Positions 12,118 through 32,223 of a DNA stretch of 64,000 nucleotides are shown piece after piece. Position numbers and translations under genes: made by a program. A model generated the notes under the pieces. It did no database searches, was not told the DNA's origin, and was given only the letters and a program-made list of their open reading frames with translations. How positions within the stretch are numbered: the stretch's first letter is position 1; every line of letters begins with the position of its first letter. The stretch is from the NCBI RefSeq assembly GCF_032062105.1, contig NW_026929349.1, forward strand, positions 62,001-126,000, in the 5' to 3' direction. Source of the DNA: Saccostrea cucullata (taxonomy: Eukaryota).

Positions 12118-12333
12118 TTGTCAATGCGTAAACGTTAATGATTCGCAGATGATGACACTAGTCAACAGGGGTTGTTTGCTCGTCCAAATCACATGGTCTC
12201 ATCTTTGGAATTTTCAGGGGGTCCATGTTTTCTGCCCTGTTCACAGATTCGTATTGTTTTGAAATAAAGTTAAAAGTGGCTATGTGTTGTAAATAGCGAG
12301 GCCACGCTCCAACTAGCACAAGCTAGTGGGACA

Positions 12334-12404
12334 ACCCTTTAGCGCAGTCGGTAGAGCGTTGGATTTTAAATCTGAGGGTTGTAGCTTCGAGCCATAGTGT
12401 GGAC
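12334..12404 (+). pseudogene. tRNA-Lys(UUU)-like sequence (Pol III A/B boxes) inside LTR-B; not a functional tRNA
   Basis: TAGCGCAGTCGGTAGAGC A-box/D-arm, GGATTTTAAATCTGAGGGT resembling the tRNA-Lys(UUU) anticodon arm, degenerate B-box GCTTCGAGCC; acceptor stem broken. Confidence 0.65.
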
Positions 12405-12471
12405 ACCCCCTAGCTAATCAGTCATATTGGCGCCCAACGTGGGGCGTCAAATGTTACGAGCGGGGAAAAAT

Positions 12472-12549
12472 GTCGGCAGGACTGGGACTCGAACTCGGGA
12501 CCTCCCGCCAACCATGCGGGTGCTCTAACCACTGAGCTACCGGGCCGAC
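12472..12549 (-). pseudogene. tRNA-like sequence (Pol III A/B boxes) inside LTR-A
   Basis: Minus strand reads GTCGGCCCGGTAGCTCAGTGGTTAGAGCACCCGCATGGTTGGCGGGAGGTCCCGAGTTCGAGTCCCAGTCCTGCCGAC: perfect D and anticodon stems, B-box GTTCGAGTCC, mismatched T stem, atypical anticodon loop. Confidence 0.7.
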
Positions 12550-12806
12550 CCACCCAATCCCCGTTACAGTTTATAGGCTTTATCATTGTTCGTTGCCTTT
12601 GTCATCAAGTTTAAGGTCAAGGTCATCACAAAGCAACGATTAAATATGTACGTGTAATATATAGAAATTGAAGGCATCGTATAACATGCCTTAAAATGCA
12701 TGGTGGATAAAAAATAAAAAAAAAATGTCTCTCTTGATTATCAGTTGCGATGCACAGTCAAAACATCGGCAGACGTTGCATTACTTGATGGTCCGATGCA
12801 TACGCC

Positions 12807-30026: not shown

Positions 30027-31920
30027 TTACCTGTGATATGACATATTTCTAAGATTGAAGCCAGAAGGGTATTTTGATATTTCTTTTCATTCAATTACTT
30101 TGGGAAATGAGATGAAAGTTTAAGCAAATTCATGGCCGCATACCCTGTATATACATTTAAAATGCCCTCTGATTTTAAAAACCTTTATCAAATTAGTATA
30201 TCAACTAATTTCCAACCACTTCCCTAAAAGAACATACACTATTCACAAATCTAAAGTGTAATTCTCTTGATCAGACAGCTTTTTGCTGGCTATAAGTAAG
30301 ATTGGAGGTTAAACGCATTATTCTGCTTTATCTCTTTCCCCTTCCAATGCCTGAACCAATAATACTAAAGTCGTTCAAAACATCCCAGTCTCACCCACAA
30401 GGGACGGACAAATAAGACAGTATATCACCATTACACAACATAGTCCTCCTTGACATCAATGCTTCTGGTCCAAAAGCCAAAAGTGCTCAAGCATTGCAAT
30501 TCCATTACTGAACAATTGGTATTACAACCCTAAAAATAGTCAAACGATGTTCAAGCATTGAAATCCAATTAAAGACAAAATTGATACTCGATTCCTCAAA
30601 AAACAAAAACAAAAAAGTAAACGCATCAACATTATAGCATGACACCATCTTGACCGCTAAACAGAATGGATAAAACAAAAACAAGTTAGATGGCCGTAAA
30701 TCTGAAGAGTCATGGTCAGGGAATGGGTCATTTAAAGCCTCAGTTGGCTAGTTACGCTTACCTAAGCCTGTGTTGAGTAAACAGACACGTTATCTAGGTA
30801 CAAGAGCACACCTGTCCTTAATTTTCCTTTTATTTGACTTGATTGCACCTTTTATACCTTGTTCGTCCATTAATACAAGTCCTTTTCAAGGCATATGATC
30901 TTTAAATCTACCAAGTTCTTCGAAAGTCAAGAGCATGCTCCGAGTATAACTGATTTTTAAACCGATACAGGCTACTGACAGAAAAGTTGATGTTACAGGG
31001 ATTTCAACAACCTCGTTTAATGTCAGCATTTTCTATGGTCGGTATGATGAACCAGTTAGCAAAAATGATTTATCAATGGGTCGTATTTTGGCCGACTTGT
31101 TTCATACCAGTTGTTAGGCTTTTGTTTATATACTGAAATTAACCATACTAAATGTTCCGTCTACTTGTTTAATACATTGGACTCATAGCGGATGTGACGT
31201 CAGGGGATGCTTACCCCTCCTAGCCAACCGATCCCATCTCTGGAATTTCCAGGGTAAGTGTTTATATTCTCTTACCGGTTTTGTATTGTTTCAGATCTAT
31301 CACTATTCAACATCTTCACCGTTTTCAGTATAATGATTTATCAATAAAATTACGAGAGAGTTAGTGCTTTCATATCTTTAAAACGAATTTTGTTCAAACG
31401 GAAGAATCTCGTAAAATTTTCGGAAAAAGTATAAGTTGGCAATTTTTCTTACGATATATCGTAAGATTTGTTGCACGACACACTTCTCAAAGGCTACCAA
31501 TGTTCAGAATAGAACCAAGTTCCTTCGGACAGTTAAGGTATTCTTACCAAGATCGGATACATTCTATTTCAAAAACACTTTTCTTGTTCTCCCTATTGCC
31601 TGCAAGGTATTGTCGATGTTTTCACGGCCTCTATTTAATATGACATAGAATATTACAGAAGAAATAGCTAAGCACGTTTGATATCAGATATTCTTGTTAA
31701 ACAACATAGGAGGTAGAGCTTTATGTACTTAGCTTTGTGTAGTTTCTCTACAAAATTAATACAATCAGTTTTCTGTCTTGGCATCAGCTGTTACATTTAA
31801 AGGAAATCAAAAATGATTTGCTAAAAAAAACAAACTTTTAATCAAATCAGCAAAGTCTTTCAATGTGCAAGAATCATATATTCAAAAGAAAACAACATAC
31901 TAGTTCTACCAAATTTAATT

Positions 31921-32223
31921 TTTTATAACCCCCGCTTGAAAAGCGGGAGAATATATAATAATCGGTATGCCCGTCCGTCCGCCTGTCTGTTACCCTTTGG
32001 GGTACCCATCTCTTATCCGCAACTCCTCTCATACCACTGAAAGAATTTTGATGAAACTTTCACAGAATCTTTATTGCATATTGCCATAGTGCACTTCTTA
32101 TTTTACTTTTTGATCCGACACATATTTTAGGTTTCCTATAGCAAAACATGGACACTGGCATTATATTCTTATGGAAGGCGGGGGTATCATTCAGTGAGCT
32201 CATTGCTCACAATACCTCTAGTT
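31921..32223 (+). mobile_element. Helentron-type non-autonomous element (HINE/pearl-like)
   Basis: TTTTATAACCCCCGC...GCGGG terminal hairpin, (GTCC/GTCT)n microsatellite, GGCGGGGGTAT subterminal inverted repeat, GTGAGC-GCTCAC hairpin, CTAGTT end; absent from sister copies. Confidence 0.7.

What the first reader, a model, noticed from the sequence alone, without database searches (positions are those of the whole stretch)
12256..12572. Two different tRNA-bearing mini-LTRs fused face to face through a self-complementary primer-binding site and integrated as one unit
Seen: GTTT | LTR-B (TGA...TCA, 12260-12424, tRNA-Lys-like A/B boxes on plus) - TAT - TGGCGCCCAACGTGGGGC - GTCA - AA - LTR-A reversed (TGTAACG...CGTAACA on minus, 12452-12568, with a different tRNA-like sequence) | GTTT, interrupting a common repeat. 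The LTRs are unrelated apart from tRNA likeness, there is no PPT, and both Pol III promoters point at the centre. The junction reads as a PBS from both sides (minus: TGACGCCCCACGTTGGGC, 15/18). Known: the 18-mer is the exact tRNA-Lys(CUU) PBS; tRNA-in-LTR TRIMs with 4-bp TSDs (Helenus) are described from animals, but as direct LTR-PBS-PPT-LTR. Inference: the last 14 nt of this PBS are quasi-palindromic (12/14 self-pairing), so plus-strand strong-stop DNAs of two co-packaged TRIM families could anneal and extend. That predicts TGGCGCCCAACGTGGGGC-GCCA-spacer-reverse LTR; the observed junction differs by one base. The product has integrase-ready CA ends. This would be an unusual route to inverted hetero-LTR elements, and possibly a self-propagating family.
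Basis: partly seen in the sequence, partly recalled or inferred. Interest (0 to 1): 0.85.

Follow-up and report, generated by a model that had tools for sequence, protein, structure and literature searches.

The report
Head-to-head fused retrotransposon LTR pair
Two different miniature retrotransposons left one LTR each, joined face to face through the copied end of a lysine tRNA and inserted as one 309-bp piece; it is a one-off fossil of a reverse-transcription side reaction that recurs in this genome, not a new mobile family.

Summary
At 12260-12568 a complete LTR of one tRNA-bearing TRIM family (B, plus strand) and a complete LTR of a second family (A, minus strand) face each other across a 22-nt quasi-palindrome. 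More than ten paralogous copies of the interrupted repeat carry a single GTTT, so the 309-bp unit went in at once with a 4-bp duplication. Both families are ordinary Helenus-type TRIMs elsewhere: direct LTRs, PPT, 4-bp duplications, but only an 11-12-nt tRNA-Lys PBS. The junction instead holds the full 18-nt complement of this genome's own tRNA-Lys(CUU) 3' end, stopping at A58. That is the expected mark of plus-strand strong-stop DNA. I found three more head-to-head Lys-PBS junctions elsewhere in the genome, one homotypic with full LTR arms, one heterotypic and one in a complex locus. So this is a recurrent side pathway. No junction has a second copy, so a self-propagating family is not supported. 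The two LTR families are related, sharing termini, PBS and internal domain. Reads could not be checked. Interest is moderate to good.

The parts
12161..12259 (+). Left part of the interrupted interspersed repeat. It ends in the left copy of the target duplication.
   Evidence: Matches dozens of paralogues at 74-83% identity. The alignment runs through the insertion site.
12256..12259 (.). Left copy of the 4-bp target-site duplication, GTTT.
   Evidence: Paralogous empty sites read TATTGTTTATAG with a single GTTT.
12260..12426 (+). Complete LTR of Helenus-type TRIM family B (167 bp, TG...GGTCATA). Its U3 terminus is at the outer end.
   Evidence: Full-length match to 32 family copies, with 92.2% identity to their column majority. 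The first 20 nt align without gaps to the family start, 16/20.
12338..12397 (+). tRNA-Lys-like Pol III cassette inside LTR-B, pointing at the centre.
   Evidence: Rfam tRNA match of 21.1 bits, below the gathering score. It is 76% identical to the genome's tRNA-Lys(CTT) gene over 54 nt.
12427..12427 (+). Single-T spacer between LTR-B and the PBS, as in canonical family B.
   Evidence: Canonical 5' LTR junctions read GGTCATA-T-TGGCGCCCAAC.
12428..12445 (+). [quoted passage not shown] This is the PBS as it is written on plus-strand strong-stop DNA.
   Evidence: Exact complement of the 3' end of the genome's own tRNA-Lys(CTT) genes. Canonical B and A copies have only the first 11-12 nt.
12432..12445 (.). 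14-nt quasi-palindrome (12 of 14 positions self-pair). This is the proposed overlap of the two strong-stop DNA 3' ends.
   Evidence: Calculated dimer has 12 bp, both 3' ends paired and 4-nt 5' overhangs.
12446..12451 (-). On the minus strand this reads TT + TGAC. That is the family-A spacer TT plus the first four PBS bases (TGGC) with one G-to-A change.
   Evidence: Canonical family A reads GTTACA-TT-TGGCGCC.
12452..12568 (-). Complete LTR of Helenus-type TRIM family A (117 bp, TGTAACGGGG...CGTAACA). Its U3 terminus is at the outer end.
   Evidence: Full-length matches to family copies at 75-84% identity, and 88% identity to the column majority of 14 copies.
12472..12547 (-). tRNA-Thr(GGT)-like gene inside LTR-A, pointing at the centre.
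   Evidence: Called by ARAGORN. Rfam tRNA 37.4 bits, above the gathering score of 29.
12569..12572 (.). Right copy of the 4-bp target-site duplication, GTTT.
12573..12620 (+). Continuation of the interrupted repeat.
   Evidence: With the insert and one GTTT removed, the window aligns to the paralogues across the site (ATAG......TGTTCGTT...).

Best explanation
The 309-bp unit is a dead-end by-product of reverse transcription that was nevertheless integrated.

Proposed sequence of events:
1. RNAs of two related Helenus-type TRIM families, A and B, were in the same particle of a shared autonomous LTR retrotransposon.
2. Each produced plus-strand strong-stop DNA, that is U3-R-U5, a spacer, and an 18-nt copy of the tRNA-Lys(CUU) primer ending at the modified A58.
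3. The last 14 nt of that copy are a quasi-palindrome. The two 3' ends therefore annealed to each other (12 of 14 pairs, both termini paired) instead of to their own minus strands.
4. Each end was extended to the 5' end of the other. This gave a blunt duplex LTR-B / 22-nt junction / reversed LTR-A, with a U3 terminus (TGTAAC type) at both ends.
5. Integrase inserted that duplex and made the 4-bp GTTT duplication.

Shown directly: the anatomy, the single-unit insertion, the identity of the 18-mer, the short PBS of canonical copies, and the recurrence of such junctions. Inferred: co-packaging, the annealing and extension steps, and the use of two U3 ends by integrase.

The unit has no PPT and no direct repeat and cannot replicate as a retrotransposon. 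It is old, with arms 8-12% from their families.
For: 1. Single event. More than ten paralogues of the flanking repeat have one GTTT and continue into the right flank. The right flank is otherwise unique.
2. Both arms are full LTRs that start at the family U3 terminus. That fits DNA templates whose 5' ends lie at U3, which is what strong-stop DNA provides.
3. The junction keeps each family's own spacer, T for B and TT for A, and the start of each PBS.
4. The 18-mer is the exact complement of nt 59-76 of the genome's tRNA-Lys(CUU) and does not read through A58. About 23 sampled canonical A and B junctions carry only 11-12 nt followed by unrelated bases.
5. The predicted junction TGGCGCCCAACGTGGGGC-GCCA differs from the observed one by a single transition.
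6. A and B share termini, PBS, PPT type and a homologous internal domain. A shared partner and co-packaging are therefore plausible.
7. Recurrence:
   - L127 is a full LTR-D, TT, the 18-mer, CA, AA and a reversed full LTR-D. The arms are 98.6% identical and the flanks match at 3 of 4 positions.
   - L130 is a family-F 5' LTR whose PBS carries the tRNA-copied GTGGGGC only in this copy. It runs straight into a reversed TRIM-D. Seven of seven other F copies are uninterrupted.
   - L085 has the same junction between family-C LTR ends.
8. In the window and in L085 the junction has the asymmetric tRNA form (...ACGTGGG...). It does not have the symmetric form expected from two genomic PBSs placed back to back.
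Against: - No reads could be examined, so support for the junction in raw data is untested.
- At 8-12% divergence, one or two substitutions in 22 nt are expected. In the window alone, only one base (G at 12440) separates the tRNA-copy model from a back-to-back 11-mer model.
- The calculated dimer energy of the 18-mer (-15 kcal/mol) is not exceptional against composition-matched shuffles: 86 of 500 were as stable.
- L127 and L130 lack 2-3 nt of the predicted GCCA, so the register is not always the predicted one.
- L127's flanks match at only 3 of 4 positions.
- Integration through two U3 ends is inferred, not shown.
- I found no published precedent.
Confidence: 0.72

Rival explanations
1. Same intermediates, but the joining was done by the host. 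Two double-stranded strong-stop fragments with 3' PBS overhangs, or broken cDNAs, were annealed and filled in by nuclear microhomology-mediated end joining. Integrase or repair then inserted the product.
For: The 14-nt overlap behaves like a sticky end. The 2-3-nt losses at the junction in L127 and L130 look like repair or slippage.
Against: The exact U3 termini at both ends and the family-typical 4-bp duplication point to integrase acting on a finished blunt duplex. L130 shows continued synthesis through a whole reversed TRIM-D and then back into element F. That is template switching by reverse transcriptase, not end joining.
Confidence: 0.12
2. Stepwise origin. A family-B TRIM and a reversed family-A TRIM inserted separately, nested or adjacent. 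Deletions then removed everything between the two PBSs and beyond.
For: TRIMs are abundant and often lie close together. Rearranged copies exist in L023, L039 and L126.
Against: The outer ends share a perfect 4-bp duplication at a site that is continuous in more than ten paralogues. LTR-A has no duplication of its own, CAAA against GTTT. At least two deletions with base-exact ends at the two PBSs would be needed. The seven extra tRNA-matching bases are absent from canonical copies.
Confidence: 0.05
3. One-sided mispriming. The strong-stop DNA of B acted as a surrogate tRNA on a family-A RNA or full-length plus strand, rather than pairing reciprocally with A's strong-stop DNA.
For: L130 shows exactly this on a TRIM-D template. 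The copy there continues past the LTR into PPT and internal domain.
Against: In the window the A arm stops exactly at the U3 terminus, with no reversed PPT or internal domain. A second strand with a 3' end in the PBS is also needed to copy LTR-B, and A's strong-stop DNA supplies one.
Confidence: 0.08
4. Assembly artefact: a chimeric or fold-back read joined two LTRs.
For: Reads could not be checked.
Against: The arms belong to different families and each has diverged 8-12% from its family. The unit sits between matching 4-bp duplications inside one continuous repeat copy. Independent loci show the same kind of junction.
Confidence: 0.03

Closest known systems
Helenus (TRIMp3), tRNA-bearing TRIMs of pteriomorph bivalves (Kojima 2024, PMC10886601)
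   Same: Both arms are LTRs of such families. They are short LTRs with a tRNA-derived A/B-box cassette, one of them tRNA-Thr-like as reported for seven bivalve families. They have a tRNA-Lys PBS and 4-bp duplications. Canonical LTR-PBS-PPT-LTR copies of both families are common in this genome.
   Different: The unit itself has one LTR from each of two families, in inverted orientation, with no PPT and no internal domain. It is joined by a 22-nt palindromic PBS and bounded by two U3 ends. The paper describes no such form.
Self-primed minus-strand strong-stop DNA of retroviruses, a dead-end fold-back product (reviewed in PMC6088434)
   Same: It is an aberrant product made when a strong-stop DNA 3' end pairs with the wrong partner and is extended by reverse transcriptase.
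   Different: Here it is the plus-strand strong-stop DNA. The pairing is between two molecules through the tRNA-copied PBS rather than a hairpin in R. The product was integrated into the germ line.
Chimeric LTR retrotransposons from co-packaged heterodimeric RNAs (reviewed in PMC6894440)
   Same: It requires two different elements in one particle and a strand-transfer step that picks the other element.
   Different: Known chimeras are collinear mosaics with direct LTRs and stay replication-competent. This one is head to head and cannot replicate.
Foldback or MITE-like inverted-repeat elements
   Same: It is a short unit with inverted ends of similar terminal sequence (TGTAAC type) and a short target duplication.
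   Different: The arms are not homologous to each other. It is single-copy, and its ends are LTR U3 termini rather than transposase sites.

Membership tests
Helenus / TRIMp3 (Kojima 2024) | tRNA-derived sequence with box A and box B inside the LTR. | tested here: met
   A tRNA-Thr(GGT)-like gene lies in LTR-A (ARAGORN; Rfam 37.4 bits). A tRNA-Lys-like cassette lies in LTR-B (Rfam 21.1 bits; 76% identity to the tRNA-Lys gene)..
Helenus / TRIMp3 (Kojima 2024) | Two direct LTRs flanking a short internal domain with a PBS at its start and a PPT at its end. | tested here: not met
   This is met by canonical copies of families A and B elsewhere. It is not met by the unit at 12260-12568, where the LTRs are inverted, belong to two families and have no PPT.
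Helenus / TRIMp3 (Kojima 2024) | 4-bp target-site duplication, as in animal members. | tested here: met
   GTTT on both sides, with a single GTTT in paralogous empty sites. Canonical B and A copies also have 4-bp duplications.
Helenus / TRIMp3 (Kojima 2024) | PBS complementary to the 3' end of a tRNA. | tested here: met
   18/18 match to the genome's tRNA-Lys(CUU). Canonical copies match at 11-12 nt.
Solo LTR nested in another element | The inner LTR carries its own target duplication. | tested here: not met
   The flanks of LTR-A are CAAA and GTTT. Its inner flank is instead the family-A spacer TT plus the start of the PBS.
Propagating inverted-repeat family (foldback or MITE-like) | Several copies of the same unit at different sites. 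| tested here: not met
   The exact junction pattern is unique. No second B-A unit is among the scored matches. L085, L127 and L130 are each single.
Plus-strand strong-stop DNA product | LTR followed by an 18-nt tRNA copy that ends at nt 59, just before m1A58. | tested here: met
   12428-12445 equals the complement of nt 59-76. The next bases are GTCA, not the TCGAAC expected from read-through. The modification itself cannot be tested in sequence.

The most novel reading that the evidence does not exclude
The quasi-palindromic 3' end of tRNA-Lys(CUU) opens a recurrent side pathway of reverse transcription. In it, plus-strand strong-stop DNA behaves as a surrogate primer on any other Lys-PBS element in the same particle. 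This gives head-to-head LTR dimers that integrase can insert through two U3 ends, and also longer inside-out recombinants. Such fossils record which families were co-packaged. They may be a general source of short inverted-repeat DNA in genomes rich in Lys-primed elements.
Probability: 0.5. Interest if true: 0.7.

Novelty: new variant of a known kind. Interest (0 to 1): 0.6.

Why it matters
The components are known Helenus TRIMs, but I have not seen this product described. It is a germ-line record of several steps that are otherwise seen only in vitro or in retroviruses.
- Reverse transcriptase of a bivalve LTR element copies exactly 18 nt of the tRNA primer, even when the element's own PBS has 11.
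- Two different non-autonomous families met in one particle.
- The integrase accepted a substrate with two U3 ends.

The three additional junctions suggest a property of the Lys(CUU) primer rather than an accident. That gives a testable prediction for other genomes and for PBS types that are not self-complementary. The unit has no evident function for the host.

Tried and rejected
- **Self-propagating family:** rejected. The exact junction is unique, there is no second B-A unit, and the 22-mer with up to 3 mismatches gave only the window, L085 and L127 as palindromic junctions. The two remaining places I did not fetch carry the same 22-mers as sites I did read.
- **Other 18-mer sites:** most sites fetched (L086, L118-L125, L128, L129) are ordinary LTR-PBS junctions of other families.
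- **Solo LTR-A with its own duplication:** rejected.
- **Dimer stability as an argument:** the 18-mer homodimer is -15 kcal/mol, but 86 of 500 shuffles are as stable. Geometry carries the argument, not energy.
- **biv-TRIM (PMC6934838):** a different family without a canonical PBS.
- **Precedent in the literature:** searches for head-to-head strong-stop dimers found none. Lauermann and Boeke 1997 is not held.
- **L085 anatomy:** arms of about 76 and at least 295 nt inside a rearranged family-C copy. I could not resolve it.
- **Earlier notes of the scan:** they mention canonical tRNA-bearing TRIMs in this genome but no inverted fusion.

Full report
**What is at the site**

- GTTT at 12256-12259.
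- A 167-bp LTR on the plus strand at 12260-12426.
- A single T at 12427.
- The 18-mer TGGCGCCCAACGTGGGGC at 12428-12445.
- GTCA, then AA.
- A 117-bp LTR read on the minus strand at 12568-12452.
- GTTT at 12569-12572.

ARAGORN and Rfam call a tRNA-Thr(GGT)-like gene at 12472-12547 on the minus strand (37.4 bits). They also give a weaker tRNA-like match at 12338-12397 on the plus strand (21.1 bits). That plus-strand match is 76% identical to this genome's tRNA-Lys(CTT) gene over 54 nt. Both cassettes point at the centre.

**What the two arms are**

Whole-genome searches show that each arm belongs to an abundant family of miniature LTR retrotransposons.
- Family B is normally LTR (TGTAACAGAG...GGTCATA), T, TGGCGCCCAAC, about 90 nt, a polypurine tract, and a second LTR. 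It is flanked by 4-bp duplications.
- Family A is normally LTR (TGTAACGGGG...CTGTTACA), TT, TGGCGCC[C/A]AAC, about 75 nt, a polypurine tract, and a second LTR. It also has 4-bp duplications.

These are Helenus-type TRIMs. Kojima (PMC10886601) described such elements from pteriomorph bivalves, including tRNA-Thr-like LTRs, tRNA-Lys primers and 4-bp duplications.

The families are not unrelated. They share the terminal TGTAAC, the PBS, the PPT type and a clearly homologous internal domain. This makes a common autonomous partner likely.

The window's LTR-B is complete. Its first 20 nt align without gaps to the family start at 16/20, so the left boundary is 12260. It is 92.2% identical to the column majority of 32 sampled copies. 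LTR-A is 88% identical to that of 14 copies. I used these majorities only to measure divergence.

**One insertion, not two**

The left flank (12161-12259) belongs to an interspersed repeat. I fetched twenty more copies and aligned them, together with L063, against the window with the insert and one GTTT removed.
- The repeat continues across the site.
- More than ten copies read TATTGTTTATAG/A with a single GTTT.
- They then match the window's right flank (first seen).

The 309 bp therefore entered as one piece and duplicated four bases, the family-typical length. LTR-A has no duplication of its own (CAAA against GTTT). Its inner side carries the family-A spacer TT and the first four PBS bases, so it is a 5' LTR with its PBS start, not a solo LTR.

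**The junction**

This genome has at least 16 exact copies of a 22-nt tRNA-Lys 3'-end motif, mostly in arrays with a period of about 1.27 kb. The three I fetched are tRNA-Lys(CTT) genes.
- With CCA added, nt 59-76 of the tRNA are the exact complement of 12428-12445.
- The match stops where A58 would be copied. The next bases are GTCA, not the TCGAAC that read-through would give.
- Eighteen nucleotides ending before the modified A58 is the textbook extent of the tRNA copy on plus-strand strong-stop DNA. That point rests on established retroviral knowledge. The general scheme is in PMC6088434.
- None of about 23 sampled canonical A or B junctions has more than 11-12 matching bases. After TGGCGCCCAAC they continue TA[A/C]AAAA or [A/C]ATAAAA.

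So the seven extra bases GTGGGGC were not inherited from a TRIM template.

The last 14 nt of the 18-mer pair with themselves at 12 of 14 positions. The calculated dimer has both 3' ends paired and 4-nt 5' overhangs. Filling those overhangs predicts TGGCGCCCAACGTGGGGC-GCCA, followed by the spacer and the reversed LTR. The observed junction differs by one transition, GTCA for GCCA.

**Mechanism**

1. Strong-stop DNAs of A and B, made in one particle, annealed through their tRNA-copied ends.
2. Each was extended to the other's 5' end, which is the U3 terminus set by PPT priming.
3. The resulting blunt duplex with a TGTAAC-type end on each side was integrated.

In family A the U5 end is the inverted repeat of the U3 end (TGTAAC...GTTACA). 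An integrase that serves this family already sees this sequence at both ends.

A possible predisposing factor is inferred, not shown. In TRIMs with an 11-nt PBS, the last seven bases of the strong-stop DNA cannot pair with the element's own minus strand, but they can pair with another strong-stop DNA.

**Recurrence**

The 22-mer with up to three mismatches, and the 18-mer followed by a reversed LTR end, gave three further loci.

*L127.* This is a full 139-nt LTR of a third Helenus family (D), TT, the 18-mer, CA, AA, and the full reversed LTR-D. The arms differ at 2 positions, and the flanks GTAC and TTAC match at 3 of 4. Family D's canonical form is in L119, with an 18-nt PBS and CTTG duplications.

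*L130.* This is a copy of an LTR element (F) whose PBS reads TGGCGCCCAAC-GTGGGGC-AAA. It then runs into a reversed TRIM-D: 3' LTR, PPT and internal domain back to PBS nt 155. It then repeats F's U5 tail and PBS and continues as F. Seven of seven other F copies are uninterrupted and have only the 11-nt PBS. This reads as F's strong-stop DNA priming on a TRIM-D template like a surrogate tRNA and later returning to F.

*L085.* This has TGGCGCCCAACGTGGGACACCA between facing ends of a 650-bp-LTR family (C). The arms are unequal and the locus is rearranged. I did not resolve it.

In the window and in L085, the central base that distinguishes a tRNA copy (...ACGTGGG...) from two genomic PBSs back to back (...ACGTTGGG...) is the tRNA form. 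In L127 and L130, 2-3 nt of the predicted GCCA are missing. This suggests an alternative register or slippage in the GCGC run.

**Rivals**

- *Stepwise insertion plus deletions.* This needs a chance 4-bp match at a site that is continuous in paralogues, two base-exact deletions, and seven extra tRNA-matching bases.
- *Joining by host repair.* Repair of the same intermediates cannot be excluded for the window. L130 argues for reverse transcriptase.
- *Assembly artefact.* This is unlikely for two diverged arms inside matching duplications, but reads were not available.

Weak points of the main model:
- At this age, one or two substitutions in 22 nt are expected. In the window alone, a single base separates the models.
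- The dimer energy is unremarkable against shuffles, with 86 of 500 as stable.

**Not a family**

The junction pattern is unique. No second B-A unit appears among the scored matches. Each of the other junctions is single. With no PPT and no direct repeat, the unit cannot replicate as a retrotransposon.

**Comparison and novelty**

The arms are members of Helenus. The unit is not, because it fails the direct-LTR, PBS and PPT architecture. It works like a dead-end strong-stop product, comparable to self-primed minus-strand strong-stop DNA (PMC6088434). It also presupposes heterologous co-packaging, as collinear chimeras do (PMC6894440). However, it is head to head and was integrated. My literature searches found no description of such a product. 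I rate it a new variant of a known kind.

**Limits**

- Other PBS types were not surveyed.
- The autonomous partner was not identified.
- Nothing here is experimental.

Noticed in passing
L127:108-415 (G000:C17575, about 420737-421044): Young head-to-head homodimer of a third Helenus family (D). It has two full 139-nt LTRs that are 98.6% identical, joined by TT + 18-nt Lys PBS + CA + AA. The flanks are GTAC and TTAC.
   Followed up: yes
L130:300-700 (G000:C12321, about 31800-32200): LTR element F whose PBS carries the tRNA-copied GTGGGGC. It runs into a reversed TRIM-D (3' LTR, PPT, internal domain), then repeats F's U5 tail and PBS and resumes F. Seven other F copies are uninterrupted. It looks like strong-stop DNA used as a surrogate primer on another element.
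   Followed up: yes
L085:226-386 and L094:5232-6844 (G000:C23172, about 53475-53635): Palindromic Lys-PBS junction between facing ends of a 650-bp-LTR family (C). The arms are about 76 and at least 295 nt. Other pieces of the same element lie nearby in rearranged order. The anatomy is unresolved.
   Followed up: partly
L023:1265-1660 (G000:C13226): Family-B TRIM with a perfect CAGA duplication. Its 5' LTR is replaced by a reversed copy running from the U5 end to just upstream of the tRNA-like start, followed by the last 30 nt of U5. The break next to the tRNA start would fit an RNA 5' end set by Pol III.
   Followed up: partly
L126:111-329 (G000:C7856): Family-D unit with a perfect GTTA duplication: a reversed full LTR, T, the Lys PBS (17/18), a shortened internal domain, and only the last 22 nt of U5. 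Both outer ends are U5 ends.
   Followed up: partly
L039:1487-1655 (G000:C19690): Two family-A LTR copies in inverted orientation sharing the tRNA 5' region. There is no clear target duplication.
   Followed up: no
window:12807-13097 (minus strand): Open frame with the TM6-TM7 end of a rhodopsin-family GPCR (7tm_1, E 2.5e-5, NPVVY motif). Its stop lies about 240 bp from the fused unit, which therefore sits just downstream of this exon.
   Followed up: partly
G000:C12954:344537-350897 and C6323:18383-22223: Arrays of a tRNA-Lys 3'-end motif repeated about every 1.27 kb, 6 and 4 units. The one C12954 unit I fetched (L116) is a tRNA-Lys(CTT) gene, and its 3' end is the primer copied at the junctions.
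   Followed up: partly
window:12060-12125: Part of a very common interspersed repeat (416 first-look candidates, about 90% identity), distinct from the repeat that the fused unit interrupts.
   Followed up: no
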